IMG/VR virus record: IMGVR_UViG_3300036766_002289
Span: 62,001 to 126,000 of that record
Direction: 5' to 3' (one strand)
Length of the DNA stretch: 64,000 nucleotides
Under the pieces are notes generated by a model that did no database searches, had not been told where the DNA came from, and saw only the letters and a program-made list of their open reading frames with translations. How positions within the stretch are numbered: position 1 is the stretch's first letter; each line of letters starts with the position of its first letter. Positions 21,585 to 46,308 of the stretch are shown piece after piece. Position numbers and translations under genes: made by a program.

Positions 21585-24500
21585 GTGCAAGAGGTATTAT
21601 ATGACCGCATCGAAGTAACTTCCACGACCACGGGGTTAGGTGCGTTTGTTCTGCTGGGCGCGACCCCTGGCAATAGGCCATTCTCCATAGTTCCAGATGG
21701 AGATTCTATACCTTATTGTATAACCAATAATATCGACTATGAAATGGGTCTTGGAACCGTCTCAGCAGGCGGCTCGATCCTTAGTAGAGACAAAGTTCTA
21801 TCTAGCACCGCTGGTGGCGCGTTCATTAATTGGCCAGCAGGAACAAAAGAAGTATTCCTAACAGCTACTTCAGACTTATTAACGCAAATAAATGTAGAAT
21901 CTACACTAATCACCAGAGAAATGATTTCTGGTGGTCGTGCTGTTAATGTCAATACATCAGGATTAGCACAAATTGCTATGGCTGGCGATCCTACAAGAAT
22001 GCCAGCCATTGGTGTAATGATAGACAACACCCTTTCTGGGCAACCAGCCAGAATTTATACCCGTTCACATCTATATTCAGATAAATTTAGTTATTCTGGC
22101 TATATTGGTTCTGAACTTTGGGTAGGAACTTCTGGTGATATAGTAACATCTGGTGGGATATCAGGCAATGTCCAGCAAATATTAGGCGTTGTAATCGCTC
22201 AATCTGGAATTTATTTGTCTCCTTCATTCCAAGTTCCTGGTACAACATTTAGTTTAACCTCTGGCATCATTACATCTGGGTTTATAGGCGATAATGCTGT
22301 CAATAGCGGCAACATTTCTAGTGGGCAAGTTGGCCAGTTTCACCTTGCTTCAGGTGCGGTTAATTCAGGGCATATTAGTAGCGGTGCAGTACAAGGTTTC
22401 TTTGGTAGCACAAGACACATAGCTTCAGGCACACTTGGCGTGTTTGATTTCGGCTCTGGCGCAGTAATAGCTGGTGCTGTTGGCTCAGGCGCAATTGTAT
22501 CAGGAAATATAGCGTCAGGTCAAGTTGGCCAATTCCATATATCCTCTGGTGCCGTAACAAGTGGTAGATTAGGCGTTACTGGAACCCCAGACGGTACTAA
22601 GTTCTTAAGAGACGACTTCACATGGGCCACTCCAACTGTTGTAAGCGGTGCAATTCAATCAGGCATGATTGCTTCAGGTGCAGTCCAAGGCTTTTTTGGA
22701 AGTACAAGGAATATTGCTTCAGGAACAGTAGGTGTATTTGATTTTGGTAGTGGTGCAGTTATAGCAGGAACAGTTGGCAGTGGTGCAATTGTAAGTGGAA
22801 ACATCGCTTCAGGTCAAGTCGGTCAATTCCATCTAGCGAGTGGTGCAGTTAATTCGGGTCACATAGGAAATAATGCTGTTGTAAGTGGTTCCATTGCATC
22901 TGGCCAGGTAAATACATATCACTTCGGTTCTGGAGCAACCGTTACAAGGGCACAATTTGTCGCTCCATTTGTAAGCGGTACCCCTTGGACCGTAACTACA
23001 GAAGAAACCATATCTGGTGTAAGAGCAGTTGCATTTAGCCAAAGTGGTAATCTAGTAATTGCTATGGCAGGTGTTTCTGGTCGTGGCCCTGCAATAGGCA
23101 TTGTAGTTGATAATGTTGCAAGTGGTACTCAAGCTAATGTTTATACTGTTGGGCCGCTACAATTTACTAGCGGCTTAGGTGATTATAGTGGTTATTTGGG
23201 TCAACCATTATACGTTGGACGTTCAGGACAAATTGTAACTGCGAGCGGTAGCTTCAATAGTGGTGGCTTCTTATCTGGTGATACGTTCCAGCAAATAGGT
23301 TATGCTTGGACTAGTGGTGGTGCCTTAATTGGCGTAAATGACCCTGTAATCAGCGGCGGCGTCCCATCATTAACTTCTGGCTTAGTACAATCTGGCAACA
23401 TAGCATCTGGTGCAGTCCAGGGATTCTTTGGCAGCACAAGAAACATAGCTTCTGGTACAGTCGGCGTCTTCGATTTTGGTTCAGGCGCAGTTATAGCTGG
23501 GACAGTTGGCTCAGGTGCAATTGTAAGCGGAAACATCGCAAGCGGTCAAATAGGTCAGTTTCACATTGCAAGTGGTGCAGTTAATTCAGGTCATATAGGT
23601 AACAACGCAGTTGTATCAGGCTCAATTGCTTCTGGGCAGATCGGACAATTCCACATTGCAAGTGGTGCAGTTAATTCTGGCCATATAGCATCAGGTGCCG
23701 TACAAGGTTTTTTTGGTTCAACAAGAAACATAGCAAGTGGTACTATAGGCGTTTTCGATTTCGGGTCTGGTGCTGTTATAGCAGGAACCGTTGGTAGTGG
23801 TGCAATTGTAAGTGGAAATATTGCTTCGGGTCAAGTCGGCCAGTTCCATATTTCTTCTGGTGCTGTAACAAGCGGCAGATTAGGAGTGACAGGAACACCA
23901 GACGGAACTAGATTCTTAAGAGACGATTTTGTTTGGGCTACTCCTACCGCAGCAGGTGTTACTAGCGGTGGCATTCAATCAGGTATGATTGCATCTGGCG
24001 CAGTCCAGGGCTTCTTTGGCTCAACAAGACACATAGCTTCGGGCACAGTAGGTGTATTTGATTTTGGTTCAGGCGCAGTTATAGCTGGGACCGTTGGCAG
24101 TGGCGCAATTGTAAGTGGTAACATAGCAAGTGGTCAAATAGGTCAATTCCATCTTGCAAGCGGGGCTGTTAATTCAGGGCATATTGGCAACAACGCAGTC
24201 GTAAGTGGCTCAGTTGCAAGTGGTCAGTTATCAACATATCATTTCGGTTCTGGTGCAACGGTCACTAGGGCACAGTTTGTTTCGCCGTTCGTTAGCGGTA
24301 CATCTTGGACAGCAATTACGGAAGAAACTATATCTGGTGTTCGTGCAGTTGCATTTAGTCAAAGCGGTAATTTAAGAATCGCAATGGCTAGCGTTTCGGG
24401 CAGAGGACCAGCCATTGGTGTAGTTATAGATAATGTTCTAAGCGGTTTACAGGCTAATGTTTATACTGTTGGTGCAGTCCAATTTACTAGTGGTTTAGGT

Positions 24501-27500
24501 GATTATAGTGGTTACATTGGTCAGCCATTATACGTAGGACGTTCAGGACAAGTTGTTACTGCGAGCGGTAGCTTCAACAGTGGCGGGTTCTTGTCTGGGG
24601 AAATGCTACAACAAATTGGTGTGGCATGGACAAGTGGTGGAGCATTAATTGGTGTGAATGACCCAATTGTTAGTGGTAGCGTTCCAGCATTAACTTCTGG
24701 TCTAGTCCAGTCTGGAAACATAGCATCTGGCGCAGTCCAAGGCTTTTTTGGAAGTACAAGAAATATAGCTTCAGGCACAGTCGGTGTATTTGATTTTGGT
24801 TCAGGCGCAGTTATAGCAGGAACCGTTGGTAGTGGTGCAATTGTAAGTGGTAATATAGCTTCAGGCCAAATTGGTCAATTCCACCTTGCATCTGGCTCAG
24901 TAACAAGTGGTGCAATTGCAAGTGGACAAGTAGGCCAGTTTGCTCATTCTTCTGGTGCAATTAATTCAGGACATGTATCTTCTGGTGCCGTTCAAGGTTT
25001 CTTTGGCTCAACAAGACACATAGCTTCAGGCACAATAGGCGTATTTGATTTCGGCTCAGGCGCAGTTATAGCAGGAACCGTTGGCAGTGGAGCAATTGTA
25101 AGTGGTAATATAGCTTCAGGTCAAGTTGGTAATTTTGCCATATCTTCTGGCGCAGTAACAAGTGGGCGATTAGGCGTCACAGGAACCCCAGATGGAACTA
25201 AGTTTTTAAGGGATGACTTTACTTGGTCCAGCCCAATTATAAGTGGCAGCATTCAATCAGGCATGATTGCTTCAGGTGCAGTGCAAGGCTTCTTTGGAAG
25301 TACGAGAAATATTGCTTCAGGCACTGTAGGCGTGTTTGATTTTGGTTCGGGTGCAGTTATAGCTGGGACCGTTGGCAGTGGCGCAATTGTAAGTGGAAAT
25401 ATTGCTTCAGGCCAAATTGGTCAATTCCACCTTGCAAGTGGTGCAGTTAATTCGGGTCATATAGGTAATAATGCAGTTGTAAGCGGTTCAGTTGCCAGTG
25501 GCCAACTTTCAATATATCATTTCGCATCAGGAGCAACAGTCACAAGGGCACAGTTCGTTGCTCCATTTGTAAGTGGTACATCTTGGACAGTAATTACAGA
25601 AGAAACCATATCTGGTGTAAGAGCAGTTGCATTTAGCCAAAGTGGCACACTTAGAGTTGCAATGGCCAGTATTTCTGGTCGATATCCAGCAATCGGTGTC
25701 GTTGTAGACAACGTTCTAAGTGGTTTACAGGCCAACGTTTACACTGTTGGCCCATTGCAGTTTACTAGTGGTTTAGGCGATTATAGTGGTTATTTGGGTC
25801 AACCACTATATGTTGGTCGTTCAGGACAAGTTGTAACCGCGAGCGGTAGTTTCAATAGCGGTGGATTATTGTCTGGCGATATGACCCAGCAAATAGGTTT
25901 TGCTTGGACAAGCGGTGGCGCACTCATAGAAGTAAATGCACCATTTGTAAGTGGTGGTGTCCCAGCATTAACAAGTGGCTTAGTCCAATCTGGTAACATA
26001 GCATCAGGTGCAGTACAAGGTTTCTTCGGCTCTACTAGGAATATTGCAAGTGGAACCGTAGGCGTCTTCGATTTTGGTTCAGGCGCAGTTATAGCAGGGA
26101 CCGTTGGCAGCGGTGCAATTGTAAGTGGAAACATCGCTTCAGGTCAGATAGGTCAATTCCACTTGGCTTCTGGTTCAGTAACAAGTGGTGCAATAGCAAG
26201 TGGACAAGTAGGCCAGTTTGCTCATTCAAGTGGCAGTGTAACGAGTGGTGCAATAGCTTCAGGTCAAGTTGGTCAATTTGCTCATTCTTCTGGCGCAATT
26301 AATAGTGGTCATGTTTCAAGTGGTGCGGTCCAGGGCTTCTTTGGCTCAACAAGACACATCGCTTCAGGCACAGTAGGCGTATTTGATTTTGGTAGTGGTG
26401 CAGTAATAGCAGGAACCGTTGGTAGCGGTGCAATTGTAAGCGGTAATATAGCAAGTGGTCAAGTAGGACAGTTCCACCTATCATCAGGCAGTGTAACTTC
26501 AGGTGCCATTTCAAGTGGTGTTGTAGGTCAGTTTGCACTTTCAAGTGGCTCAGTAACAAGCGGTGCGATTTCAAGTGGTCAAGTAAATACTTATCATTTC
26601 GGCAGTGGTGCAACTGTCACTAGGGCACAATTCGTCGCTCCATTTGTAAGTGGTACATCTTGGACAGTAATTACAGAAGAAATAATTTCAGGTGTAAGAG
26701 CAGTTGCATTAAGCCAAAGCGGTACTTTAAGGGTCGCTATGGCCAGTATTTCTGGTCGATACCCAGCAATCGGTGTGGTCGTAGACAACGTTCTAAGCGG
26801 TTTACAAGCTAATGTATACACTGTAGGACCGCTCCAGTTTACAAGCGGGTTGGGTGATTATAGTGGTTATTTGGGTCAACCATTATATGTTGGTCGTTCA
26901 GGACAAGTTGTTACTTCAAGCGGCAGCTTCAATAGTGGTGGATTGCTTTCTGGTGATATGACCCAGCAAATAGGTTACGCCTGGACTAGTGGCGGTGCCT
27001 TAATAGAGGTCAATGCACCATTTGTAAGTGGTAGTGTTCCGTCATTAACAAGTGGTTTAGTCCAGAGTGGCAATATTGCTAGTGGTGCCGTACAAGGCTT
27101 CTTCGGAAGTACGAGAAACATAGCTTCAGGCACAGTAGGTGTATTTGATTTTGGTTCTGGTGCAGTTATAGCAGGAACAGTTGGTTCAGGTGCAATTGTA
27201 AGCGGAAATATAGCTTCAGGCCAAATTGGTCAATTCCACCTTGCAAGTGGCAGTGTAACTTCAGGTGCAATAGCAAGTGGACAAGTAGGCCAGTTCGCCC
27301 TTTCAAGTGGTTCAGTAACGAGTGGTGCAATAGCTTCAGGTCAAGTAGGACAATTTGCTCATTCTTCTGGCGCAATTAATAGTGGTCATGTTTCAAGTGG
27401 CGCAGTCCAGGGCTTCTTTGGCTCGACAAGACATATAGCAAGTGGTACTGTAGGCGTGTTTGATTTTGGTTCAGGTGCAGTTATAGCAGGAACAGTTGGC

Positions 27501-29033
27501 AGTGGAGCAATTGTAAGCGGTAATATAGCTTCAGGCCAAGTAGGACAATTTCATCTATCATCAGGCAGTGTAACTTCAGGTGCTATATCTTCGGGTGTTG
27601 TAGGCCAATTTGCACTAAGTTCTGGCTCAGTAACGAGTGGTGCAATATCATCTGGTCAAGTAAACACTTACCATTTTGGTTCTGGAGCAACAGTAACTAG
27701 GGCACAATTTGTTGCTCCATTTGTGAGTGGAACATCTTGGACAATAATTACAGAAGAAACTATATCAGGCGTAAAAGCAGTAGCACTAAGCCAGAGTGGC
27801 ACACTTAGAGTTGCAATGGCCAGTATTTCTGGTCGATATCCAGCAATCGGTGTCGTTGTAGACAACGTTCTAAGTGGTTTACAAGCTAATGTATACACTG
27901 TTGGTCCGCTCCAGTTTACTAGCGGGTTAGGCGATTATAGTGGTTACATTGGTCAGCCATTGTATGTTGGTCGTTCAGGACAAGTTGTAACAAGCTCTGG
28001 CAGCTTCAACAGTGGTGGATTGTTGTCTGGCGATATGACCCAGCAAATAGGTTTTGCTTGGACAAGTGGCGGCGCACTCATAGAGGTTAATGCCCCATTT
28101 GTAAGCGGTGGAACTCCAACTTTAACATCAGGTATAGTCCAAAGTGGCAACATCGGTTCGGGTGCAGTCCAAGGCTTCTTTGGCAGTACACGTAACATAG
28201 CTTCAGGCACAGTCGGTGTATTTGACTTTGGTTCAGGTGCAGTTATAGCAGGAACAGTTGGTAGCGGTGCAATTGTAAGCGGAAACATTGCAAGTGGTCA
28301 GATTGGTCAATTCCACTTGGCTTCTGGTTCAGTAACTTCAGGTGCAATAGCAAGTGGACAAGTAGGCCAGTTTGCTCTAAGTTCAGGCTCTGTAACAAGT
28401 GGTGCAATTGCTTCTGGGCAGATAAGTCAGTTTAAGTTAGCATCAGGTGCGGTTAATAGTGGCCATATTGGTTCTGGTGCAGTCCAAGGCTTTTTTGGCT
28501 CAACAAGACACATCGCTTCAGGCACAGTGGGCGTATTTGATTTTGGTAGTGGTGCAGTAATAGCAGGAACAGTTGGGTCTGGTGCAATTGTAAGTGGAAA
28601 TGTCGCAAGTGGTCAAATAGCAGATTTCCATTTTGCATCTGGTGCAAAAATAAACGTGGCGGGTTGGATCACTGATACAGCATTGGTTGCAGGTACGCCA
28701 ATTTCTGGCAGCTGTGCAGTTTCTGTTGACGCAAGTGGCCACCTAATTCAAAGTAACCCAACACTATCTGGTCAGTTCCCAATTTATGGCATTGCAGACG
28801 GGGCACTTGTGTCTGGTTCTGCTGGTATTATAAGATTAATGGGACCATTTACATCTACAGAGTTTAACTTCTCTGGCAGTATCGGTAGAGTTTTGTATGT
28901 CGGTTTAAGTGGTCAAATAACCCCAACAATGCCTTCACTATCTGGTGTCTTTACACAGAAAGTTGGCATTGCAACTAGCCATTCTGGTATGTTGGTTAGA
29001 ATAGATAACCAATTCATACAAATTGGCTTATAA
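21585..29033 (+). CDS. giant Ser-Gly-rich repetitive fibre protein (2482 aa)
   Basis: Phage fibre-type N-terminus (DRIEVTSTTTGLG); 14 copies of SGAVQGFFGSTRxIASGTxGVFDFGSG; about 7 copies of a ~100-aa globular module; GTPDGTKFLRDDFTW motifs; TAAATA upstream. Confidence 0.85.
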   Translation: MQEVLYDRIEVTSTTTGLGAFVLLGATPGNRPFSIVPDGDSIPYCITNNIDYEMGLGTVSAGGSILSRDKVLSSTAGGAFINWPAGTKEVFLTATSDLLTQINVESTLITREMISGGRAVNVNTSGLAQIAMAGDPTRMPAIGVMIDNTLSGQPARIYTRSHLYSDKFSYSGYIGSELWVGTSGDIVTSGGISGNVQQILGVVIAQSGIYLSPSFQVPGTTFSLTSGIITSGFIGDNAVNSGNISSGQVGQFHLASGAVNSGHISSGAVQGFFGSTRHIASGTLGVFDFGSGAVIAGAVGSGAIVSGNIASGQVGQFHISSGAVTSGRLGVTGTPDGTKFLRDDFTWATPTVVSGAIQSGMIASGAVQGFFGSTRNIASGTVGVFDFGSGAVIAGTVGSGAIVSGNIASGQVGQFHLASGAVNSGHIGNNAVVSGSIASGQVNTYHFGSGATVTRAQFVAPFVSGTPWTVTTEETISGVRAVAFSQSGNLVIAMAGVSGRGPAIGIVVDNVASGTQANVYTVGPLQFTSGLGDYSGYLGQPLYVGRSGQIVTASGSFNSGGFLSGDTFQQIGYAWTSGGALIGVNDPVISGGVPSLTSGLVQSGNIASGAVQGFFGSTRNIASGTVGVFDFGSGAVIAGTVGSGAIVSGNIASGQIGQFHIASGAVNSGHIGNNAVVSGSIASGQIGQFHIASGAVNSGHIASGAVQGFFGSTRNIASGTIGVFDFGSGAVIAGTVGSGAIVSGNIASGQVGQFHISSGAVTSGRLGVTGTPDGTRFLRDDFVWATPTAAGVTSGGIQSGMIASGAVQGFFGSTRHIASGTVGVFDFGSGAVIAGTVGSGAIVSGNIASGQIGQFHLASGAVNSGHIGNNAVVSGSVASGQLSTYHFGSGATVTRAQFVSPFVSGTSWTAITEETISGVRAVAFSQSGNLRIAMASVSGRGPAIGVVIDNVLSGLQANVYTVGAVQFTSGLGDYSGYIGQPLYVGRSGQVVTASGSFNSGGFLSGEMLQQIGVAWTSGGALIGVNDPIVSGSVPALTSGLVQSGNIASGAVQGFFGSTRNIASGTVGVFDFGSGAVIAGTVGSGAIVSGNIASGQIGQFHLASGSVTSGAIASGQVGQFAHSSGAINSGHVSSGAVQGFFGSTRHIASGTIGVFDFGSGAVIAGTVGSGAIVSGNIASGQVGNFAISSGAVTSGRLGVTGTPDGTKFLRDDFTWSSPIISGSIQSGMIASGAVQGFFGSTRNIASGTVGVFDFGSGAVIAGTVGSGAIVSGNIASGQIGQFHLASGAVNSGHIGNNAVVSGSVASGQLSIYHFASGATVTRAQFVAPFVSGTSWTVITEETISGVRAVAFSQSGTLRVAMASISGRYPAIGVVVDNVLSGLQANVYTVGPLQFTSGLGDYSGYLGQPLYVGRSGQVVTASGSFNSGGLLSGDMTQQIGFAWTSGGALIEVNAPFVSGGVPALTSGLVQSGNIASGAVQGFFGSTRNIASGTVGVFDFGSGAVIAGTVGSGAIVSGNIASGQIGQFHLASGSVTSGAIASGQVGQFAHSSGSVTSGAIASGQVGQFAHSSGAINSGHVSSGAVQGFFGSTRHIASGTVGVFDFGSGAVIAGTVGSGAIVSGNIASGQVGQFHLSSGSVTSGAISSGVVGQFALSSGSVTSGAISSGQVNTYHFGSGATVTRAQFVAPFVSGTSWTVITEEIISGVRAVALSQSGTLRVAMASISGRYPAIGVVVDNVLSGLQANVYTVGPLQFTSGLGDYSGYLGQPLYVGRSGQVVTSSGSFNSGGLLSGDMTQQIGYAWTSGGALIEVNAPFVSGSVPSLTSGLVQSGNIASGAVQGFFGSTRNIASGTVGVFDFGSGAVIAGTVGSGAIVSGNIASGQIGQFHLASGSVTSGAIASGQVGQFALSSGSVTSGAIASGQVGQFAHSSGAINSGHVSSGAVQGFFGSTRHIASGTVGVFDFGSGAVIAGTVGSGAIVSGNIASGQVGQFHLSSGSVTSGAISSGVVGQFALSSGSVTSGAISSGQVNTYHFGSGATVTRAQFVAPFVSGTSWTIITEETISGVKAVALSQSGTLRVAMASISGRYPAIGVVVDNVLSGLQANVYTVGPLQFTSGLGDYSGYIGQPLYVGRSGQVVTSSGSFNSGGLLSGDMTQQIGFAWTSGGALIEVNAPFVSGGTPTLTSGIVQSGNIGSGAVQGFFGSTRNIASGTVGVFDFGSGAVIAGTVGSGAIVSGNIASGQIGQFHLASGSVTSGAIASGQVGQFALSSGSVTSGAIASGQISQFKLASGAVNSGHIGSGAVQGFFGSTRHIASGTVGVFDFGSGAVIAGTVGSGAIVSGNVASGQIADFHFASGAKINVAGWITDTALVAGTPISGSCAVSVDASGHLIQSNPTLSGQFPIYGIADGALVSGSAGIIRLMGPFTSTEFNFSGSIGRVLYVGLSGQITPTMPSLSGVFTQKVGIATSHSGMLVRIDNQFIQIGL
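22300..28640 (+). repeat. modular internal coding repeats of fibre 1 (synonymously diverged)
   Basis: Recurrent ggtgcagtccaaggcttctttgg..gatttt ggt units. Confidence 0.9.
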
Positions 29034-35411: not shown

Positions 35412-35422
35412 TATATAATAAT

Positions 35423-36469: not shown

Positions 36470-36471
36470 TC

Positions 36472-37500: not shown

Positions 37501-37506
37501 AGGAAT

Positions 37507-39842
37507 ATGTTAAAATTATCACTTGCAGTAGCACATACCACGACACCCTTTATAAGTGTATACCCTTGGAATGGCGGATTCTGGACGAAGAATGCTAATC
37601 CTAGTACATTACCTGCGGGTGATTGTGTCAATACTGCATGGTCTCCTAATGGTGCTTATGTAGCAGTCACAACTGGCACTTCTCCTTATATAGCTGTCTA
37701 TCCTTGGACAGGGCAGTTTGGTGCTAAATTTGCTGATCCACAGGTTTTACCTGCTGTTCCTGGTGATGTACAATGGTCTCCTAAAGGAGATTTTATTGCT
37801 GTAACTCACACTGTCGCTAATTACATACATGTTTATCCTTGGAACAGTTCTGGTTTTGGTGCGCCAGTAGCGGACCCAGCAACGCCACCTACTGCAAATA
37901 CCATAGGTGTTGCATGGCGTCCCCAAGGTGATTATATTGCTGTTGCCTATGGTGCATCACCTTGGTTAAATGTTTATTCTTGGAATAGTGCTAGTGGATT
38001 TGGTGCCAAAGTTGCTGATCCTAGTACATTGCCAACTGGTATTGGGAATTGTGTTACGTGGTCTCCTTTGGGAGATTATGTTGCCATAGGACATGCCACT
38101 TCCCCTAATATAAGTGTATATCCTTTTTCAAATGGTACATTAGGTGCTAAAATAGCTGACCCTAGTACATTACCTGGGAATACTTGTGTAGGGATACAAT
38201 GGTCTCCACTTGGTAATTTTATTGGTGTTGCTGTCATTGTTTCTCCTTTCGTAGTTGTATATCCTTGGAGTGCTGGATTTGGTGCCAAAGTAGCTGATCC
38301 TAGTACATTACCAGCCAGTACTGGCAGGGGATTATCGTGGTCTCCTGCACAAGATTACCTTGCAGTCGCTCATGATAGTACGCCATTTATAAGTGTATAT
38401 CCGTGGACTGGCACTTTTGGTTCTAAGTTGGCCAACCCTGGAGTATTGCCAGCTAGTGATGGTAAGGACGTTGCGTGGCTTAATGTTCCACAAGTATCCA
38501 AAACAAAGACTTTATTTAATCCGTTTAATCCTAAATCCATATCTGGTTTGGTTTCTTGGCATGATGCTAGTGTTCAGTCATCCCTTTGGCAGAATAGTAC
38601 CAGAACTACGCCTGTAACATCTAATAACGATCCAATTGGTGGCTGGGATGATTTAAGTGGTAATGGATATCACATTATTCAGTCTACGAATGGCAGTAGG
38701 CCACTTTACAAAACTAGTATGCTTAATAACTTGCCAGTGATCCGTGCGGACGGTGTTGACGATTACTTAACTAATGCATCATACACTAATGGCACTACTT
38801 GGTCTATTTTTGTGGTTTGTAGAAGGCTTACCAATAATGTTAATTGTAGATTTCTATGTATTTCTCTAAATGCATCCCCAGGTGGTTCCACTAGTATTAA
38901 TTTATTCAACGACACTACTGGAGTTTTTGGTTATTATGGTGATAACGTGGCTGGTGCCCCTGTATTTTCTCCAGGCAATGATACAATATTTTCTCTTGCA
39001 GAACTTTTATTAACTGGTGGTGGCACGGGAAACGCATATTACAATGGTAATTTGGCAGGCACTTGGACGATGCCAACTCTGTTTTGTCAGCTGCGAATAG
39101 AATCAAAGTAGAAAACTATTTAATGAAAAAATGGAGTCCATTTACATTTACTCCAAATCTAATTCCTGGTTTGTCAGCGTGGTATGATTCAACAAAATTA
39201 ACTTCATTATGGCAAAATAGTACTAGAACAACATCTGTGAAAGTAGATGGTGATTTAGTTGGTGCTTGGGATGATTTGAGTGGGAACGGCAATCATGTTA
39301 TACAATCTGTTAATATAAATAGACCGACATATAAAACTGCTATACAAAATGGCAATCCAATTGTTCGTTTTACTTTTGCAAACGGGACGTTCTTGGCCAA
39401 GACATATGGCACTCTTTTAAGTCAACCAAGTACAATTTTTTGGGCTGGATCATTTGGAAGTCATATAAACACTTTCATTTATGATGGTGTGGATGCAACT
39501 AATAGAAATGTTTTGTGTCATGGACCAAGTGGTAGTGCTGTAAATTTTGGAGCTTTTGCTGGTGTGTCCTTGGAAGCTGCACACGCCATACCAATTGCGG
39601 CAGGGGTATGGTCTGTCGTATTTAATGGTGGTTCAAGTCAGATATGGCAGGATGGAGCTTCATTTACTTCTGGTAATGCGGGGGCGGCAGCAATGGGTGG
39701 TCTAACGATGGGAGCCGCATATACTGGTGGGGCCAATGCTGATGAAGATACTTTTGAATTGATTATATACAACAGGTTGTTAACCACGGATGAGCGACAG
39801 CAGGTGGAAAGGTATCTAAAACTTAAATGGGGAACTCCATAA
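37507..39842 (+). CDS. beta-propeller paralog 5 fused to two LamG/ConA-like lectin domains; frameshift or deletion at ~39074-39078
   Basis: GLVSWHDAS..WDDLSGNG and GLSAWYDS..WDDLSGNG..IIYNRLLT..VERYL; split across ORFs 37507..39111 and 39063..39842. Confidence 0.7.
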
Positions 39843-39881: not shown

Positions 39882-40535
39882 ATGCCAGCATCATGGGAAA
39901 TAGCTAATCAACAAAGAGTGCTTGTAGTGATCTTAACAAGAGAAACAACCAGCACAGCCTGGGCATCTGGATTTCGTAATCTTCGCATACCAGGAACACA
40001 CGTATTCCTTACGGGAATGCCATTCGATCATGCCAGAAACGTAGGGTGCCAAAAGCTCCTTGAATTTGGCTGGGAATGGTTATTCTTCTTGGATGACGAT
40101 GTGATTGCACCGTCAGACGCTATTGAAAAATTGGTGAGTCGTAACTTACCAATTATTAGTGGTTTATATTACAGAAGAAGTCCACCAATTGCTCCAGTAA
40201 TGCTGAGAGAAAATAAAGAAGGTAGAACCTGGGTAACTGAATTTAAAGTACCAGATTTAATGCCTGTCGATTATGTTGGGGCTGGTTGTTTACTCATACA
40301 TAGAGACGTTATAAGGTCATTGCCCCCATTAAGTTCAAAATGTCATTGGTTTGAGTGGCGTGTAGACCGAGTTGATCTTCCAGCAAATCAACGTATGTCA
40401 GAGGACTTTGCTTTTTGTCAACATGCTAGAAGTCATGGTTATAAGATAATAATGGACACAAGCGTACAGTGTCGTCACGCGGGACTTGGTGAAAGTAGAA
40501 TCGGTGGTCAATTTATTCCTTTGGAGTTGGTATGA
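39882..40535 (+). CDS. GT-A (GT2-like) glycosyltransferase
   Basis: DHARN..LFFLDDD..GAGCLLIHR..SEDFAFC..H. Confidence 0.88.
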   Translation: MPASWEIANQQRVLVVILTRETTSTAWASGFRNLRIPGTHVFLTGMPFDHARNVGCQKLLEFGWEWLFFLDDDVIAPSDAIEKLVSRNLPIISGLYYRRSPPIAPVMLRENKEGRTWVTEFKVPDLMPVDYVGAGCLLIHRDVIRSLPPLSSKCHWFEWRVDRVDLPANQRMSEDFAFCQHARSHGYKIIMDTSVQCRHAGLGESRIGGQFIPLELV

Positions 40536-41557
40536 AAATATGTGTAATTTCTACAACTGTTCTTGTTTGTCCACCTCCTGGATATGCAGGACTTGAACAA
40601 CTTGCATGGTTACAAGCAAAAGGTCTAGCCGCCAAAGGCCATAAGGTGACATTAATTGCGCCAAAAGGCTCAACGGCACCACCTAATGTAGAAATGCATG
40701 AAACAACATTAGGAGAAGAAGAAAAACAAGCTTATAGTGGCTATTGGCAAAAGTTGTCTGGATTTAATTGTATCATTGATAACTCCTGGCAGAAATGGAG
40801 TTATATGTTAAAGATGGAAGGCAAACTAAAAGCACCTATTTTAGGCGTAGTACATGCTCCGATCAATACTATGTATAGTGCAGCACCGCCCAACATAGAG
40901 TCTCCTTGTTTTGTTGCTATAAGTAAAGATCAGGCAAAGCATATTAAGGAACATTTGAAGTGCGATTCGAGAGTTGCCTATAATGGTGTTGATGTTGATT
41001 TTTATAAGCCAGATGGGACAGCCAGGAATAATAGATACTTGTTTTTAGCCAGAATGAGCAGTATAAAAGGTCCAGATATTGCTATAAATTCAGCTAAAAA
41101 ATGTAGAGTAGCACTAGATTTAGTAGGGGACGATACAATAACTGGAGAACCAGATTTTTGTAACTTTTTAAGACAACAATGTGCGTTAACTCCTGGTTTA
41201 AGATATATTGGACCACAAAGTAGAGATGACTGTGTTATGTGGTTTAACATGAATAAGGCATTACTACATCCTAATAAGATATTTAGAGAACCATTTGGGC
41301 TTGCTCCTGTAGAAGCTCAGTTGTGTGGAATGCCTGTAATAGCTTGGGATAACGGGGCAATGAGAGAAACAATCAAGAATAAGGAAACTGGATTTTTGGT
41401 TAAATCCGAAGAAGAGTTTGATGAATTAATTAGAACCAACGCGGTTAAATCAATTAATGCAAAAAGATGCCGCGAATGGGCAAGTCAGTTCTCGTATGAG
41501 AATATGATTGATAAGTATGATGAACTTTGTAAAGAAGCAATTGAGGAAGGATGGTAA
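40532..41557 (+). CDS. GT4 glycosyltransferase
   Basis: PPPGYAGLE..YNGVD..KGPD..EPFGLAPVEAQLCG. Confidence 0.92.
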   Translation: MKICVISTTVLVCPPPGYAGLEQLAWLQAKGLAAKGHKVTLIAPKGSTAPPNVEMHETTLGEEEKQAYSGYWQKLSGFNCIIDNSWQKWSYMLKMEGKLKAPILGVVHAPINTMYSAAPPNIESPCFVAISKDQAKHIKEHLKCDSRVAYNGVDVDFYKPDGTARNNRYLFLARMSSIKGPDIAINSAKKCRVALDLVGDDTITGEPDFCNFLRQQCALTPGLRYIGPQSRDDCVMWFNMNKALLHPNKIFREPFGLAPVEAQLCGMPVIAWDNGAMRETIKNKETGFLVKSEEEFDELIRTNAVKSINAKRCREWASQFSYENMIDKYDELCKEAIEEGW

Positions 41558-41560: not shown

Positions 41561-41992
41561 ATGACAAAGACTAAGGCTAAGAAGTCACCAAAAGCTACTA
41601 AGGTTGCCAAGGTGAAGAAGGTTGTATATGCATTCGACGTGGATGATACCTTGGAGGTATCAAAGGGTCCAATCAAGATGCAACAATTGATGGATTTAAG
41701 AGTTGATGGACATATTGTCGGATTATGTGGCAATGTTATTCCTGTATTATCTGTGGATGGATGGGAACACCTTATTTCCTTCTTTAACGTAGGTATGCCT
41801 AAAGATGCTTATCTCAATGAAGTAAAGAGATTCGTCAGGGCCGATGACTATGTGTTTGTAGGAAATGTTGGCCCAATTGATAGTGCCTATTTGAAGGTAC
41901 CACAAACTGGTGCCTCCGATGACATGGGCGCTGCAATGCGTTCAAGTTGGAGATTTATCACTGAAGCAGATTTCGCCAATGGAACTCGATAA
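41561..41992 (+). CDS. HAD-like phosphatase
   Basis: AFDVDDTL..FVGN..DD. Confidence 0.7.
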   Translation: MTKTKAKKSPKATKVAKVKKVVYAFDVDDTLEVSKGPIKMQQLMDLRVDGHIVGLCGNVIPVLSVDGWEHLISFFNVGMPKDAYLNEVKRFVRADDYVFVGNVGPIDSAYLKVPQTGASDDMGAAMRSSWRFITEADFANGTR

Positions 41993-41994: not shown

Positions 41995-43017
41995 ATGAAA
42001 AAGTTATTGTATGTGACCTCAGATAAAATTGGGGAAGAAACTGGTGCAGGTGCGGTTACACAAAACGAGTTGGATAGTCTAAAAAAACTCGGTGCGACTG
42101 ATGTTTTAAACCCTGCACCCCAACAAGACCCCTTTGAAAGCGATGAGATTGCTTTAAATCAGTGTGAAGGTGCGTATAAATTAGCGCACTTTTACGCTGG
42201 AACTTATTCCAAACTTATCAGCTTTCTAAAGAGTAAAGGTACCAAAATTACCTATACTGCCGCTGCACATGATGTAAAAGTAAGCAAAGAAGATCATGAG
42301 AAATTTGGACAGATTTTTGATTATCCACACTTAACCGATCCAGATTTATGGAAGAGATATTTGGAAGGATACAAGAGTGCAGATGTAATCATTTGTCCGT
42401 CTACGCACAGCAAAGAAGTCATGGAAAGCTATGGATGCAAGAAGGTTAAGGTGATACCACATGGATGTTACGTGTCACCTGCTTTTGAGCCTATTCCTAA
42501 AGTGTTTAGGGTTGGATACTTAGGTGCGGTTGGATTTGATAAAGGTCTTGTTTATCTTTTACAAGCTTGGGCTAAGTTGAATTATAATAACACTTATCTT
42601 ACATTGGCGGGCAGACATACTCCAAGTATCATGCATTTAGTTCGTCAATATGGTGGTGGCTCAATTTATCTTGCAGGATGGTTGAAGTCGGCTTCAAATT
42701 TATACAATTCGTGTTCAGTGTATGTCCAACCAAGTGTTTCAGAAGGTTTTGGGTGTGAGGTAATTGAGGCAATGGCTCATGGACGCCCTGTTATTTGCTC
42801 AGATGGAGCAGGTGCGGTAGATTGTGTGACCCACGAAAAAGATGGTATCATTGTGCCTAAAAGGAATGTCAAGGCGATTGCTGATGCTATTGACTTCTAT
42901 AAAAAGAATCCTGATACGCTTTATGAACATGGTAAAAATGCCAGAGAGAAGGCTAAGCAATATTCTTGGGATTTAATAAGAGAAAAATATTATAAATTGT
43001 GGAAGGATATGGTATGA
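41995..43017 (+). CDS. GT4 glycosyltransferase
   Basis: KGLVYLL..PSVSEGFGCEVIEAMAHGRPVI. Confidence 0.92.
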   Translation: MKKLLYVTSDKIGEETGAGAVTQNELDSLKKLGATDVLNPAPQQDPFESDEIALNQCEGAYKLAHFYAGTYSKLISFLKSKGTKITYTAAAHDVKVSKEDHEKFGQIFDYPHLTDPDLWKRYLEGYKSADVIICPSTHSKEVMESYGCKKVKVIPHGCYVSPAFEPIPKVFRVGYLGAVGFDKGLVYLLQAWAKLNYNNTYLTLAGRHTPSIMHLVRQYGGGSIYLAGWLKSASNLYNSCSVYVQPSVSEGFGCEVIEAMAHGRPVICSDGAGAVDCVTHEKDGIIVPKRNVKAIADAIDFYKKNPDTLYEHGKNAREKAKQYSWDLIREKYYKLWKDMV

Positions 43018-43646
43018 GCTACGATAAAGTAAAATACCAAGCTGAGTACAGAGAGAAAAACAAAGAAAGACTTAACAACTACGACAAAATTCGTAATTCA
43101 ACTGATGAACGTAAGTTGAAGAAAAGTCTAAATCATAAAAAATACTATGCTCTAAACAGAGAAAAAGTAATCGAGCGAACTAGAGAGTACAAAAAAACAC
43201 ATCCTGAATTAAAAATTTTTATTGGGGCTTGGAGAAAAGAATTAAATCAAATTTGGGGTGTTGGCCAAAAAGTAGCATCCCAAGAAGTTGGGTTTAAAGC
43301 TGAAGCAATTATTGCTGCACTGCTTCCGAGCGAAGGTTATCAAGATGTTTATTATGTTGCAGACGACAAGCATTATGCCAATTTTCCAATTGATGTTTTT
43401 GCCAAGAAAGATGGTTTTATACACGCATTCCAAGTAACAACATATCCAAAACGAAAAATTACTTCTAGATTAAGAGATTTAGTCTCATATATGGGTTGGA
43501 TTTTGCATATTACTTTTGTAAGACCTAATTTAAGAGACTATTATGATATAGTAGTCTCATCTGATAGAAAAAACGTCGCTGTGCCAATTGATATTGTAAT
43601 GAAAGAAGGGAGATTGATTCCAAATGAGTTACAACTTACCATTTAG
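43014..43646 (+). CDS. putative free-standing endonuclease (PD-(D/E)XK-like) with basic helical N-terminus
   Basis: YREKNKERL repeats; E..PIDVFAKK..AFQV. Confidence 0.5.
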   Translation: MSYDKVKYQAEYREKNKERLNNYDKIRNSTDERKLKKSLNHKKYYALNREKVIERTREYKKTHPELKIFIGAWRKELNQIWGVGQKVASQEVGFKAEAIIAALLPSEGYQDVYYVADDKHYANFPIDVFAKKDGFIHAFQVTTYPKRKITSRLRDLVSYMGWILHITFVRPNLRDYYDIVVSSDRKNVAVPIDIVMKEGRLIPNELQLTI

Positions 43647-45249
43647 TGAAGGTCAAAAAATAATTGAGTTGGGCGGGGGTCAATTCCCTCGTTTTCGGCC
43701 CAATGTGGACATACGCAAAGAAGATACAGTCGATCTTGTTGCTGACTTCGATGACCCACTTCCGCTGAACCCAAATGAATGGCATGGTGTATTTTGCAGT
43801 TACGTTTTAGAGCATATTTCTTATCGTAAAATTAAACAATTTATCACAGAAGTCCACAGAATCCTTAAGCCAGGCGGCATTGCCGTATTTATTACTGCAA
43901 ACACAGAAGCTCAGATGGAATGGGTTCTGGGACAAAAAGATTGGGACGACCGAGCCTCTTCAATTCTTTATGGCGACCAAGACTATAAAGACAATACACA
44001 CAAGAACACACTTTCACCGAAATATGTTTTTAAACTGCTTCAGGAATTAGGATATAAAGATATCTTTGTCATGCCTTGGGGTGAATTAGGCACCGACATG
44101 ATAATTGAAGCTAAAAAAGAAGTTACAGAAAGAAAAAACTTATTCGATAAGCATTATTTCAATGGTGGTAAAAAAGTCGGCGGTTATGCCAGAGAAGGTT
44201 ATTGGGACTACCCCGTCCATAATGTGACTTTTGATAAAGTAATGGAGCTAAAGCCTAAATCTGTACTGGAAATTGGCTCATCGAGAGGGTATATCCTCAA
44301 GAGAATTCAGGACACAGGTATCCCTGTTCTTGGTTTAGAAATATCTAAGCACTGTTATCTTACTAGAGCAATTAAAGAAATAGTTGAATGGGATTTGTGT
44401 AAGTTTCCGTGGCCAGTCAAAGACAAGGCATTCGACCTAGCTATAAGCTGTGCAGTATTAGAACATATACCAGAGGAACATCTGCCAAGCTTGATTAAGG
44501 AATTAAGTAGAGTAAGCAAGCGTGGTCTTCATGGTGTCGATTTTGGCGAACATGATGATGGTTTTGATAAGACTCATTGTACACTTAAAAAGAGAACTTG
44601 GTGGGAAGAAAAAATGCCTGCCAAACAAGAAGTTATTAATAAGGAAGAATTAGAACAGGGTTCATTATTGAGACATATTCCTGCTGGGGACGATAAGTTG
44701 AAGCTTAATATTGGTTCATTTATAAATCAATTCCACTATGGTTGGTTGAACATGGATATTATTGACCTTAATCAATTTGCAAGGCAAAATTACTATAAGT
44801 TCTTCGCAAGAGATGTTAGAGAAGGACTACCATTTGCAAATAAGTCTGTTGACCTAATGTATTCAAGTCATTTCATCGAACACTTAACATACGCTGAAGC
44901 CAAGGCATTTATTAATGAGTGCAAGAGAGTGATGAAGGAAAATGGGACTGTAAGATTGCTCATTCCAGACCTTGAATTATTGTTTAATAAGTACAAGAGC
45001 AATGAATTAGGCATGTTTGATGAAATCAACGATGATTCGGCATCTTTCAGTACTCAGGCGAGCAAATTGTGGACATTGTTGTTCTCAGGGCATAAGGCCG
45101 CGTTTGATTTCAATACAATCAAAGAAATGGGCACTGAGGCTGGATTTAAAGTAGAGAAAAAGTCATTTAGAGAAGGTCATCCACAAATTATTAAAGAAAC
45201 AATTGATATGCTTCCAGACTTAAGCTTGTTTGTGGAACTCTCTCAGTGA
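43624..45249 (+). CDS. triple-domain SAM-dependent methyltransferase
   Basis: IELGGG..VLEH; LEIGSSRG..VLEH; LNIGS..HFIEH. Confidence 0.85.
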   Translation: MSYNLPFSEGQKIIELGGGQFPRFRPNVDIRKEDTVDLVADFDDPLPLNPNEWHGVFCSYVLEHISYRKIKQFITEVHRILKPGGIAVFITANTEAQMEWVLGQKDWDDRASSILYGDQDYKDNTHKNTLSPKYVFKLLQELGYKDIFVMPWGELGTDMIIEAKKEVTERKNLFDKHYFNGGKKVGGYAREGYWDYPVHNVTFDKVMELKPKSVLEIGSSRGYILKRIQDTGIPVLGLEISKHCYLTRAIKEIVEWDLCKFPWPVKDKAFDLAISCAVLEHIPEEHLPSLIKELSRVSKRGLHGVDFGEHDDGFDKTHCTLKKRTWWEEKMPAKQEVINKEELEQGSLLRHIPAGDDKLKLNIGSFINQFHYGWLNMDIIDLNQFARQNYYKFFARDVREGLPFANKSVDLMYSSHFIEHLTYAEAKAFINECKRVMKENGTVRLLIPDLELLFNKYKSNELGMFDEINDDSASFSTQASKLWTLLFSGHKAAFDFNTIKEMGTEAGFKVEKKSFREGHPQIIKETIDMLPDLSLFVELSQ

Positions 45250-46308
45250 GTTTTTTGCTAGGCTCCAATCACCATTTAGACGCATAATACGTGTTTTGGG
45301 GTACCAATAGGTCGTTTCATCGTCAATTCCCCAACGCCAATCGTGTTGTTTGCCCAATAATAGAATAGTTGGTATCCCCATCGCCCCAGCAATATGTGCA
45401 ACTGCCGTATCTACTGATACTACTACATCCATTTCGCTAATTAGATTGGCGGTTTCTTGAAGTGTTGAGAAATTGTATGATACGATATCATCTTTAACAT
45501 CTTTTGTAAGATTGTATAATACTCTATCTTCGTTCTTTAATTCCAATAAGTGCTTAACATCACATGAACGATGTTTATTATTTTTGTATGTTGGGTTCCC
45601 TTTCCAGCATACGCCAATTTTCAGTTTGTCAGTTTGTTGGGGAAATTTTCTAATTTTAAGACCTGGGCTGTTGATTTCTCTGGAGAAAATATAAGGTTTG
45701 TTTGGAATTTTGTCCTTAGTAATCTTGAATTTATAAGGCAAACTTCCAATAGACACAGCACAATCAAAGTCAAAAGAAGGAATCGGTGGTTGTTTACCTC
45801 TTGTAACGATGATATCGCAGTATTGCTCAGTGAATAAGCCATTCATTTCTTCGGCACATTCGACTATGATCTTTTTGAAGAACTTCTTAAGCATAGGTAG
45901 GAATCGCATATATTGCACCATGTCGCCTATGCCTTGTTCATTGTAAACATAGATAGTATTGCCTTTCTTTTTACCATCCCAATGGTTCCTGAAGCGGTCA
46001 TGATACATGGAGAATGTATCATTTACTTTGAAACGACATTCGAATTCTCTGAAGAAGTTTGGTAGGTCGTGTTTAATGCCGTAGCAGGTTGCTAGGTTAT
46101 AATGGGCTAATGGAAAATCTAATTTCTTGTAATGAGAGATTGCTTCGTCTATTTTGCGTAAATTGTAGCAACAAATACCAAGATAGAAATCTACTCTTTG
46201 TGTGGTTTTCTCTGACGGACAATCTTTCAGAAGACCATATACGGATTGGTAGTCTTCTTCGTTAATTAAAATTTCGCATTGATTGCAGGTTTCAAACCAA
46301 CTACTCAT
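45220..46308 (-). CDS. TPR + GT9-like glycosyltransferase
   Basis: TPR helices; EQGIGDMVQYMRF; IGVCWKGNP; VVSVDTAVAHIAGAMG..WRW. Confidence 0.88.
   Translation of the reverse strand: MSSWFETCNQCEILINEEDYQSVYGLLKDCPSEKTTQRVDFYLGICCYNLRKIDEAISHYKKLDFPLAHYNLATCYGIKHDLPNFFREFECRFKVNDTFSMYHDRFRNHWDGKKKGNTIYVYNEQGIGDMVQYMRFLPMLKKFFKKIIVECAEEMNGLFTEQYCDIIVTRGKQPPIPSFDFDCAVSIGSLPYKFKITKDKIPNKPYIFSREINSPGLKIRKFPQQTDKLKIGVCWKGNPTYKNNKHRSCDVKHLLELKNEDRVLYNLTKDVKDDIVSYNFSTLQETANLISEMDVVVSVDTAVAHIAGAMGIPTILLLGKQHDWRWGIDDETTYWYPKTRIMRLNGDWSLAKNSLREFHKQA

What the first reader, a model, noticed from the sequence alone, without database searches (positions are those of the whole stretch)
21585..46308. Proteoglycan-like system: Ser-Gly-saturated fibres next to a glycan-building enzyme cluster
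Seen: in both fibre proteins the dipeptide SG recurs every few residues. This holds in the repeats and also in unrelated unique domains (ILTSGSIVSGATN, VNSGTFTTAISGGLTSG, IFSGTLSGL, PISGLQL), while the first ~115 residues of fibre 1 contain none. Both TCN and AGY Ser codons are used, pointing to protein-level selection. Downstream lie GT2, two GT4, a HAD phosphatase, a triple methyltransferase and a TPR-GT9. Known: Ser-Gly is the O-glycan attachment motif of eukaryotic proteoglycans, and some actinobacteriophages glycosylate their virions with their own GTs. Inference: SG is a sequon for phage-encoded O-glycosylation that builds a dense methylated (possibly sulfated) glycan coat on the fibres.
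Basis: partly seen in the sequence, partly recalled or inferred. Interest (0 to 1): 0.85.

Follow-up and report, generated by a model that had tools for sequence, protein, structure and literature searches.

The report
Ser-Gly phage fibres with glycosyltransferase cassette
Two giant fibre proteins of an uncultivated huge phage are built from a five-residue repeat with a Ser-Gly turn, and across about twenty phage lineages such fibres are the only conserved neighbour of a four-enzyme sugar-adding and methylating gene cassette, so the fibres are probably glycosylated, though this is not shown.

Summary
Fibre 1 (21585-29033) has 258 SG against 68 expected. Fibre 2 (29106-33392) has 110 against 30. 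GS is not enriched. SG is also enriched in the knob and C-terminal domains. The first 114 residues have none. TCN and AGY codons are used about equally.

SG is first of all structural. Spacings peak at 5, 10 and 15 residues, giving a pentapeptide hydrophobic-x-S-G-x. It is a trait of a large fibre family: 148 of 150 homologue clusters have SG O/E above 2. Some members sit in small phages with no glycosyltransferase nearby.

The link to the enzymes is nevertheless supported. Orthologues of the small GT-A gene (39882-40535) travel with GT4, GT4 and a multi-methyltransferase. In 33 of 34 informative loci (19 of 20 lineages) an SG fibre lies just upstream. Among 222 gene families in 16 lineages, only the fibres and these four enzymes are conserved.

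So: a conserved fibre-plus-glycosylation module, probably fibre glycosylation. Whether the SG serine is the acceptor is untested. The proteoglycan analogy, the sulfation and the claim that glycosylation drove SG enrichment are not supported. The WD40-like array, HAD-like gene and TPR-GT9 are lineage-specific extras.

The parts
21585..29033 (+). Fibre 1, 2482 aa. It has an N-terminal anchor (residues 1-114, no SG), then rods of the pentapeptide repeat (hydrophobic-x-S-G-x) alternating with seven knob domains (ISG[VGS][RKC]AV motif at residues 114, 476, 916, 1342, 1701, 2060, 2373).
   Evidence: PHROG tail-fibre and virion-protein families. The N-terminus is 35% identical to that of a 651-aa fibre in L004 whose C-terminal sequence looks, by my reading and untested, like an intramolecular-chaperone domain.
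26640..27017 (+). One example knob domain of fibre 1 (residues about 1686-1811), a beta-rich globular domain.
   Evidence: AlphaFold2 pLDDT about 85-90 for this part. Foldseek matches to phage capsid decoration and cement proteins and the phi29 head-fibre base: 8saj E 1e-4, 8hdt_G, 8qsy, 6qyy, lambda gpD/SHP.
29106..33392 (+). Fibre 2, 1428 aa. Same rod modules, two knobs (residues 603 and 897), and a unique C-terminal domain (1040-1428) that is also SG-enriched.
33403..39111 (+). Array of five WD40/PD40-like beta-propeller paralogues (33403-34467, 34481-35119, 35357-36469, 36472-37500, 37507-39111). A lineage-specific accessory, not part of the conserved core.
   Evidence: Pfam. Paralogues flank the cassette in the close relatives L009 and L008. 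No WD40-like family is among those found in more than a few of the 16 lineages.
39063..39842 (+). LamG/ConA-like virion protein, lineage-specific.
   Evidence: PHROG 10356 'virion structural protein', E 9e-17. Homologue next to Laminin_G_3 genes in L003/L014.
39882..40535 (+). Small GT-A-fold glycosyltransferase (217 aa, invariant DDD at 71-73). First gene of the conserved cassette and a candidate priming enzyme.
   Evidence: AF2 pLDDT 92. Best PDB matches are STIV A197 (E 1.4e-11), LH3 and COLGALT1 collagen glycosyltransferases, Mimivirus R699 and Mnn9.
40532..41557 (+). GT4 glycosyltransferase a (cassette core).
   Evidence: Pfam PF00534 at 67.5 bits and PF13439. Orthologues in 16 of 16 lineages.
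41561..41992 (+). HAD-like small protein (DVDDT motif). Accessory, function unverified.
   Evidence: Motif only. No Pfam or NCBIfam hit. Orthologues detected in L009 and L058, and a 148-aa gene at the same position in the L002 contig.
41995..43017 (+). GT4 glycosyltransferase b (cassette core).
   Evidence: Pfam PF13692 at 97 bits and PF00534 at 97 bits. Found in 15 of 16 lineages.
42999..43646 (+). YraN-like nuclease gene inserted between GT4b and the methyltransferase. Not part of the system.
   Evidence: Weak NCBIfam YraN hit. Absent at this position in the close relative L009.
43624..45249 (+). Methyltransferase with three class-I SAM domains (cassette core).
   Evidence: Pfam Methyltransf_11/25, three stretches. 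Found in 15 of 16 lineages.
45220..46377 (-). TPR + GT9-like glycosyltransferase. The likely start is at 46308, giving 362 aa. Accessory, found near the cassette in 4 of 16 lineages.
   Evidence: Pfam PF01075 at 33 bits and TPR. Homologues are bacterial TPR-GT9 proteins of 400-650 aa..
46283..47347 (+). Sixth WD40-like paralogue, closing the cluster.
   Evidence: 71% identical to the paralogue flanking the cassette in L009.

Best explanation
The window is part of a huge uncultivated phage (IMG/VR contig of 390 kb; one of its proteins also sits on a 590-kb contig). The two proteins are long virion fibres, probably trimeric.

They are made of rods built from a pentapeptide repeat, hydrophobic-x-Ser-Gly-x. 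Ser-Gly most likely forms the tight turn and the Ile/Val every fifth residue forms the core. The rods alternate with globular knobs that resemble trimeric capsid-decoration proteins. SG saturation is therefore a structural trait of this fibre family. That much is shown.

Next to such fibres, in about twenty lineages, lies a conserved cassette of four soluble enzymes: a small GT-A glycosyltransferase, two GT4 glycosyltransferases and a multi-domain SAM methyltransferase.

Inferred mechanism: during late infection the GT-A, or one of the GT4 enzymes, puts a first sugar from a host nucleotide-sugar on the fibre protein in the cytoplasm. The other transferases extend it, and the methyltransferase O-methylates the glycan. 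The result would be a glycan-decorated fibre.

The exposed serine of the SG turns is the most obvious acceptor, since 64-71% of all fibre serines are in SG. This is a guess. In this phage a HAD-like protein, a TPR-GT9 transferase and WD40-like and LamG proteins are lineage-specific additions.
For: SG counts and 5/10/15 spacing, with a hydrophobic residue at S+3 in 214 of 258 and 80 of 110 cases.

A family-wide trait: 203 clusters at E<1e-30, and 148 of 150 have SG O/E above 2.

Distant homologues of the repeat use other small residues in place of SG: AVTxxKIAxGAV in S-TIP37 and Pkon1.

The rod is not foldable as a monomer, while the knob is confident and decoration-protein-like.

Cassette order GT-A, GT4a, GT4b, methyltransferase is conserved. 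An SG fibre lies upstream in 33 of 34 loci and 19 of 20 lineages, at 0.15-8.8 kb. It stays adjacent in seven loci (two lineages) where the fibre gene lies on the opposite strand. None of 35 loci with only distant GT-A homologues has an SG fibre.

Of 222 gene families in 16 lineages, only the fibres and the four enzymes are in 15 or more; the next best family is in 6.

The same arrangement appears in Logan/JGI contigs L002, L017 and L018.

The GT-A model is closest to STIV A197 and to collagen and Mimivirus glycosyltransferases that act on proteins. No enzyme has a membrane segment, and there is no flippase or polymerase.

Precedent: mycobacteriophage virion glycosylation, as summarised in PMC12619734.
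Against: There is no direct evidence of any glycan.

SG-saturated fibres (O/E 3.1-4.1) occur on four contigs that lack the cassette orthologue. One is a temperate phage of about 44 kb with no GT hit in the roughly 25 kb seen. A Terrisporobacter phage with an SG-containing fibre repeat has no annotated GT.

At SG columns Ser is replaced by G, N, T, A and D about equally, as for a turn residue, and TG is depleted.

All cassette-bearing contigs may belong to one broad phage clade, so part of the association is shared ancestry.

The structural similarity of the GT-A to protein-modifying enzymes is at the general fold level (TM 0.6-0.74, 10-16% identity).

I could not compute whether the serines are exposed.
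Confidence: 0.55

Rival explanations
1. SG is purely structural and the enzymes do something else. On this view the cassette sits beside the fibre genes because both lie in the late or host-interaction region. It might modify another virion protein (for example the beta-propeller or LamG proteins), a host cytoplasmic target, or a small molecule.
For: SG fibres exist without the cassette. The substitution pattern at Ser is that of a turn residue. GT4b overlaps the Pfam family 'GT4 in conflict systems'. Jumbo-phage GT clusters have been read as host-envelope polysaccharide modifiers (PMC7824862).
Against: The flanks are otherwise not conserved; only the fibres and the four enzymes are. Adjacency survives inversion and variable spacers. 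WD40 and LamG genes are absent from most lineages. No membrane, lipid-carrier or export component is present.
Confidence: 0.27
2. On this view SG is a sequon selected for dense O-glycosylation. The fibres would be proteoglycan- or mucin-like bottle-brushes in which most SG serines carry a methylated, possibly sulfated, glycan.
For: The module is conserved. Ser is kept through switches between the TCN and AGY codon families. SG is also enriched in non-repeat domains. Distant repeat relatives without GTs use A, D, N or T instead of S. A sulfotransferase lies next to a TPR-GT9 homologue in relative L008.
Against: SG has strict 5-residue periodicity with a hydrophobic register. SG saturation is equal on cassette-less contigs. 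There is no S-to-T tolerance. Acidic flanks are absent: D+E is 3-4%. No GT14-type enzyme and no sulfotransferase were found among the window proteins I scanned.
Confidence: 0.15
3. The cassette glycosylates and methylates phage DNA (base hypermodification) to evade restriction. On this view the fibre adjacency is coincidental.
For: Phage GTs often modify DNA (PMC12619734).
Against: No hydroxymethylase or thymidylate-synthase-like gene lies in or next to the cassette in the window. The specific association with fibre genes has no explanation under this view.
Confidence: 0.03

Closest known systems
Virion glycosylation of mycobacteriophages (Freeman et al. 2023, as summarised in PMC12619734)
   Same: Phage-encoded glycosyltransferases are proposed to act on the phage's own virion proteins, giving a glycan coat on the particle.
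   Different: There the glycans are on the C-termini of the capsid and tail-tube subunits and were shown by mass spectrometry. Here the proposed substrate is a repeat fibre and the enzymes are a GT-A/GT4/GT4/multi-methyltransferase cassette. Nothing is shown experimentally, and no cultured phage carries the cassette.
Bacterial repeat adhesins with dedicated O-glycosyltransferases (SRRP-GtfA/B, Sdr-SdgA/B, AIDA-I-Aah, TibA-TibC); my own knowledge
   Same: A long repetitive serine-rich surface fibre is encoded next to soluble GT-B enzymes that modify it in the cytoplasm.
   Different: GT4a and GT4b score far below the SdgA, SdgB and GtfA models (15-43 bits against cut-offs of 575-800). The TPR-GT9 scores 13 bits against 200 for Aah/TibC.
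Glycosyltransferases acting on viral and collagen-type structural proteins (STIV A197; human LH3 and COLGALT1; Mimivirus R699)
   Same: These are the best structural matches of the small GT-A, with a DxD motif. According to the PDB entry titles returned, LH3 and COLGALT1 take part in O-linked glycosylation of collagen hydroxylysine.
   Different: Identity is only 10-16%. The acceptor there is hydroxylysine. The substrate of A197 is unproven (my knowledge).
Eukaryotic proteoglycan Ser-Gly xylosylation
   Same: Only the dipeptide.
   Different: Acidic flanks, disordered context and a GT14-type xylosyltransferase are all lacking.
Decapeptide tail-fibre repeat of cyanopodoviruses, roseophages and others (AVTxxKIAxGAV)
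   Same: Homologous by tblastn, with the same 5/10-residue periodicity and position in fibres.
   Different: Those repeats use A, D, N, T and K where this clade has S-G. The genomes I listed have no annotated GT.
FlmG / OGT-type TPR-glycosyltransferases
   Same: The TPR-GT9 protein has the same layout: an N-terminal TPR region, which in FlmG binds the protein substrate, and a C-terminal GT-B domain (PMC7591256).
   Different: Homology to FlmG was not tested. The TPR part here is short (a few repeats). The gene is not part of the conserved core (4 of 16 lineages).

Membership tests
Proteoglycan-type Ser-Gly xylosylation site | Acidic residues flanking Ser-Gly | tested here: not met
   D+E is 3.1% and 4.1% of the fibres. 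Only 49 of 258 and 18 of 110 SG have any D or E within 4 residues. The flanks are A, I, V, G.
Proteoglycan-type Ser-Gly xylosylation site | A GT14-type protein xylosyltransferase | tested here: not met
   Pfam scans of all cluster proteins give GT4, GT9 and weak GT2/GT21/Anp1 hits only.
Proteoglycan-type Ser-Gly xylosylation site | Sulfotransferase for glycan sulfation | tested here: not met
   None among the window proteins scanned. One is present in relative L008.
Phage virion glycosylation (actinobacteriophage type) | Phage-encoded GTs beside virion structural genes | tested here: met
Phage virion glycosylation (actinobacteriophage type) | Glycan found on virion protein by mass spectrometry | not testable with these tools
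   No isolate exists, and there is no orthologue in 50,697 phage records.
Pentapeptide-repeat proteins (Pfam PF00805, A[D/N]LXX) | Match to the family profile | tested here: not met
   No Pfam hit on either fibre. Only the 5-residue period is shared.
Phage tail-fibre repeat family (PHROG 892 / 13518) | Profile match | tested here: met
   Fibre 1 matches phrog_13518 at E 2e-54 and phrog_892 at E 4e-33. Fibre 2 matches none, but it shares modules with fibre 1.
gpD/SHP-like trimeric capsid decoration fold (knob domain) | Fold similarity of a confident model | tested here: inconclusive
   Knob pLDDT is about 88. Foldseek gives E 1e-4 to 1e-3, probability 1.0 and target-normalised TM 0.41-0.59. Trimer state was not tested.
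GT-A fold glycosyltransferase | Rossmann-like GT-A fold with a DxD motif | tested here: met
   pLDDT 92. STIV A197 at E 1.4e-11 and TM 0.66/0.74. D71 and D73 are invariant and D72 is nearly invariant (at least 90%). Pfam GT2 is below threshold at 12.8 bits, so CAZy family membership is not established.
GT4 glycosyltransferases | Pfam Glycos_transf_1 above the gathering score | tested here: met
   67.5 and 96.7 bits against a cut-off of 26.4.
Serine-repeat adhesin O-GTs (SdgA/SdgB, GtfA) | NCBIfam model cut-off reached | tested here: not met
   15-43 bits against cut-offs of 575-800.
GT9 (heptosyltransferase-like) with TPR | Pfam PF01075 and TPR | tested here: met
   33.1 bits against a cut-off of 22, but only profile positions 173-218 matched. 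The TPR hits (PF12895 24.7 bits, PF00515 23.3, PF07719 19.5) fall below their Pfam cut-offs of about 27-28, so the TPR part is sub-threshold. All LPS heptosyltransferase equivalog models are far below cut-off.
HAD phosphatase | Motif I DxDxT plus a family profile match | tested here: inconclusive
   DVDDT is present. No Pfam or NCBIfam match.
Class I SAM methyltransferase, three domains | Three separate Methyltransf_11/25 matches | tested here: met

The most novel reading that the evidence does not exclude
A widespread clade of uncultivated phages, some huge, would make glycoprotein fibres. On this reading most of the hundreds of Ser-Gly turns on each fibre carry a short methylated O-glycan added by a dedicated phage cassette. 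This would give a mucin- or proteoglycan-like bottle-brush on the virion, a kind of dense, repeat-templated protein glycosylation not described for bacterial viruses.
Probability: 0.2. Interest if true: 0.85.

Novelty: new variant of a known kind. Interest (0 to 1): 0.62.

Why it matters
Virion glycosylation by phage-encoded enzymes has so far been shown only for actinobacteriophages, on capsid and tail-tube termini.

Here the comparison across genomes points to a different system that seems widespread. The module comprises repeat fibres plus a fixed set of four enzymes. It occurs in about twenty lineages of environmental phages, including one of 390-590 kb.

If the fibres are glycosylated, this would change how host recognition, particle stickiness and resistance to proteases or immune and defence factors are viewed for these phages.

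It would also offer a compact, soluble, four-gene system for decorating a repetitive protein scaffold. The claim is directly testable by co-expression.

If the fibres turn out not to be glycosylated, the SG fibres remain a large, uncharacterised structural family, with 203 clusters at E<1e-30.

Tried and rejected
- Megablast of the window against 50,697 phage records gave no match.
- Sequence search of rod and C-terminal parts against the PDB found nothing meaningful. The same was true for TPR-GT9.
- AlphaFold2 of a rod+knob unit as a monomer left the rod unstructured (pLDDT below 55), so serine exposure could not be judged. Model coordinates are not readable by scripts.
- Searching viral contigs with the whole-unit alignment A2 failed because no conserved stretch was available. 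I replaced it with the knob alignment A4.
- The TPR-GT9 gene looked like a good candidate for a protein-binding priming enzyme, by analogy with FlmG. It is near the cassette in only 4 of 16 lineages, so I demoted it to an accessory.
- The WD40-like paralogues were considered as alternative substrates. I rejected them as a general explanation because most lineages lack them.
- DNA-level repeat or microsatellite origin of SG is rejected by the codon mix and the 72% nucleotide identity between copies.
- Simple composition bias is rejected by shuffles and by GS not being enriched.
- One look-up failed through my own off-by-one error and was repeated correctly. One look-up of an overlapping ORF found nothing.
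- The primary mycobacteriophage glycosylation paper is not held in the library.
Full report
**Where the window comes from**

The fibre and glycosyltransferase genes are 100% identical to IMG/VR contig IMGVR_UViG_3300036766_002289, which is 390,039 bp. The TPR-GT9 protein is also recorded on a 590-kb contig. No deposited phage resembles the window at the DNA level. PHROG hits make it a large phage. They include tail-fibre families, a DNA methyltransferase, a purC-like gene and homing endonucleases.

**The observation**

- Fibre 1 (21585-29033, 2482 aa) has 258 SG where composition predicts 68.
- Fibre 2 (29106-33392, 1428 aa) has 110 where composition predicts 30.
- The reverse dipeptide GS is at expectation. 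The other genes of the region have 0-4 SG each.
- Other structural proteins further along the window are not enriched.

Within single non-repeat domains SG is still 3- to 5-fold enriched. For example, the fibre-2 C-terminal domain has 23 against 6.8, and no shuffle out of 5000 reached that. Residues 1-114 of fibre 1 have none. That stretch is homologous to the N-terminus of an ordinary fibre in locus L004, so it is probably the virion-attachment domain.

Serine codons in SG are split evenly between TCN and AGY, as in the rest of the window.

Twenty copies of a 74-residue module are 84% identical in protein but only 72% in DNA. Every invariant serine column contains both codon families. So the repeats are old, under strong protein-level selection, and not a DNA-level artefact.

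**What SG is**

Distances between successive SG peak sharply at 5, 10 and 15 residues. An Ile, Val, Leu, Phe or Met lies three residues after the serine in 214 of 258 and 80 of 110 cases. The unit is thus a pentapeptide, hydrophobic-x-S-G-x. That is the signature of a regular beta-structured fibre with Ser-Gly in the turn.

Fibre 1 consists of such rods interrupted by seven knob domains, and fibre 2 has two.

AlphaFold2 on a rod-plus-knob unit, with a 33-sequence alignment, leaves the rod unstructured as a monomer. That is expected if it folds only as an oligomer. The knob folds confidently. The knob resembles trimeric capsid decoration and cement proteins and the base of the phi29 head fibre.

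An exhaustive HMMER search finds 203 clusters at E<1e-30. Of the best 150, 148 have SG at more than twice expectation (median 3.6), while TG is depleted.

More distant relatives of the repeat have the same 5/10-residue frame but use A, D, N, T and K in place of S-G. These are found in the cyanopodovirus S-TIP37 and in Paracoccus phage Pkon1. A Terrisporobacter phage is intermediate. None of these genomes has an annotated glycosyltransferase.

At 34 S-G columns of the alignment, serine (86%) is replaced about equally by G, N, T, A and D. That is the pattern of a small turn residue, not of a hydroxyl acceptor.

**The enzymes**

Pfam confirms two GT4 enzymes, a protein with three SAM-methyltransferase domains, and a TPR plus GT9-like protein on the opposite strand.

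It has a conserved DDD motif, with D71 and D73 invariant and D72 nearly so. It models at pLDDT 92 as a GT-A fold. Its best PDB matches are the STIV viral glycosyltransferase A197, the collagen glycosyltransferases LH3 and COLGALT1, Mimivirus R699 and yeast Mnn9.

The 'HAD phosphatase' rests on a DVDDT motif alone.

- five WD40-like beta-propeller paralogues (33403-39111) and a LamG-like virion protein between the fibres and the enzymes;
- a sixth paralogue after the enzymes;
- a YraN-like nuclease gene inserted between GT4b and the methyltransferase, which is absent from a close relative.

No enzyme has a membrane segment. No sulfotransferase or sugar-nucleotide gene was found among the proteins I scanned in the window.

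**Are fibres and enzymes linked?**

This was the decisive question, and the answer surprised me.

Walking from fibre homologues gave the following:
- A contig with fibres 48% identical has two SG fibres followed, after a few genes, by GT-A, GT4, a 148-aa gene, GT4 and a methyltransferase.
- A 39%-identical lineage has the four enzymes 0.9 kb after its fibres.
- Another starts the GT-A 66 bp after the fibre.
- The L003/L014 contig has the GT-A orthologue 2.2 kb after its five-fibre array.

Searching viral contigs with an alignment of the GT-A gave 79 loci. Forty-four carry an orthologue (42% identity or more), nearly always followed in the same order by GT4a, GT4b and the methyltransferase. Of 34 such loci with at least 3 kb of upstream DNA, 33 have an SG-periodic fibre gene upstream at 0.15-8.8 kb, and never downstream. 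In seven loci belonging to two lineages (the L034 group and L056) the fibre genes are on the opposite strand yet still adjacent.

Grouped at 85% GT-A identity, these are 22 lineages. Twenty are informative and 19 are positive. None of 35 loci with only distant GT-A homologues has an SG fibre.

An all-against-all comparison covered 364 ORFs in 16 representative lineages. Of 222 gene families, only five occur in 15 or more lineages: the SG fibres, GT-A, GT4a, GT4b and the methyltransferase. The next family is in six, and TPR-GT9 is in four. So this is not general synteny. It is a five-family module in otherwise unconserved surroundings.

**The link is one-sided**

Searching from the knob domain found ten loci. 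Six have the cassette downstream. Four are on contigs of 24-43 kb that lack it, and those contigs did not appear in the GT-A scan either.

Their neighbours have no GT domains. One is a temperate phage of about 44 kb with portal, capsid, tape-measure and integrase genes and no GT hit in the roughly 25 kb for which I obtained gene tables. SG enrichment there is as high as elsewhere (3.1-4.1).

So the cassette seems to need the fibres, but the fibres do not need the cassette.

**Conclusion**

- SG saturation is best explained as the turn motif of a structural repeat.
- The enzymes are best explained as an accessory system that decorates these fibres.
- The closest parallels are phage-encoded virion glycosylation in mycobacteriophages (PMC12619734) and the adhesin or flagellin glycosylation islands of bacteria. 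FlmG, for example, is a TPR-GT enzyme that binds its protein substrate through its TPR domain (PMC7591256).
- The SG serine is the obvious candidate acceptor because 64-71% of fibre serines are in SG. Nothing tested here shows it.
- The proteoglycan analogy fails on flanking residues, enzyme family and context. Sulfation has no support in the window, though a relative has a sulfotransferase beside a TPR-GT9 homologue.
- No cultured phage carries the GT-A or methyltransferase orthologue, so the test has to be heterologous co-expression.

**Limits**

- Many loci are fragments.
- All cassette-bearing contigs may belong to one broad clade.
- Fibre detection used thresholds I chose: at least 15 SG, O/E of 2 or more, and at least 5 spacings of 5, 10 or 15.
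- Orthology was judged by tblastn identity.
- The trimeric rod structure is inferred, not modelled.

Noticed in passing
window 33403-39111 and 46283-47347: Six paralogous WD40/PD40-like beta-propeller genes bracket the enzyme cluster. The same bracketing is seen in relatives L009 and L008. ORFs 34481-35119, 35058-35411 and 35357-36469 overlap in a way that suggests a frameshifted or split copy.
   Followed up: partly
window 42999-43646: A YraN-like (PD-(D/E)xK-type) nuclease gene sits between GT4b and the methyltransferase. It is missing at that spot in the 86-92% identical relative L009, so it looks like a recent mobile insertion.
   Followed up: partly
window 48726-49811 (-): A protein combining a LAGLIDADG homing-endonuclease region with a C-terminal HNH-like region (PHROG 11023 and 99).
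   Followed up: no
window 54954-56837 and 56839-59870: Another probable receptor-binding protein: a tail-fibre-like N-terminus fused to an NHL/Vgb-lyase-type beta-propeller. It is followed by paralogues of PHROG 19068. None is SG-enriched.
   Followed up: partly
window 21585-33392: Twenty copies of a 74-aa module are 84% identical in protein but 72% in DNA. This suggests long-standing purifying selection together with synonymous divergence, perhaps selection against recombination between repeats.
   Followed up: partly
L014 20391-22181 (contig 3300028569 Ga0247843_1000055) and L025: In this lineage a 2OG-Fe(II) oxygenase, a thioredoxin and a second, distant GT-A homologue (389 aa, opposite strand) lie between the fibre array and the cassette. 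The oxygenase-plus-GT pairing recalls collagen lysyl hydroxylase/glycosyltransferase systems.
   Followed up: no
contig 3300047160 (L002/L057), downstream of the methyltransferase: A 1045-aa B12-binding radical-SAM protein with an intein follows the cassette (gene table).
   Followed up: no
L008 7505-8323 (-): A sulfotransferase gene lies directly beside a TPR-GT9 homologue. A second TPR-GT9-like gene, a Methyltransf_21 gene and three WD40-like paralogues are also there.
   Followed up: no
window 17963-18880 and 10328-11104: A purC-like (SAICAR synthase) auxiliary metabolic gene and a DNA methyltransferase lie upstream of the fibres.
   Followed up: no
window 22001-38000: G+C is 0.44-0.45 across the fibres and WD40-like genes against 0.37-0.40 elsewhere. 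I attribute this, without testing it, to their Gly/Ala/Ser-rich composition rather than to foreign origin.
   Followed up: partly
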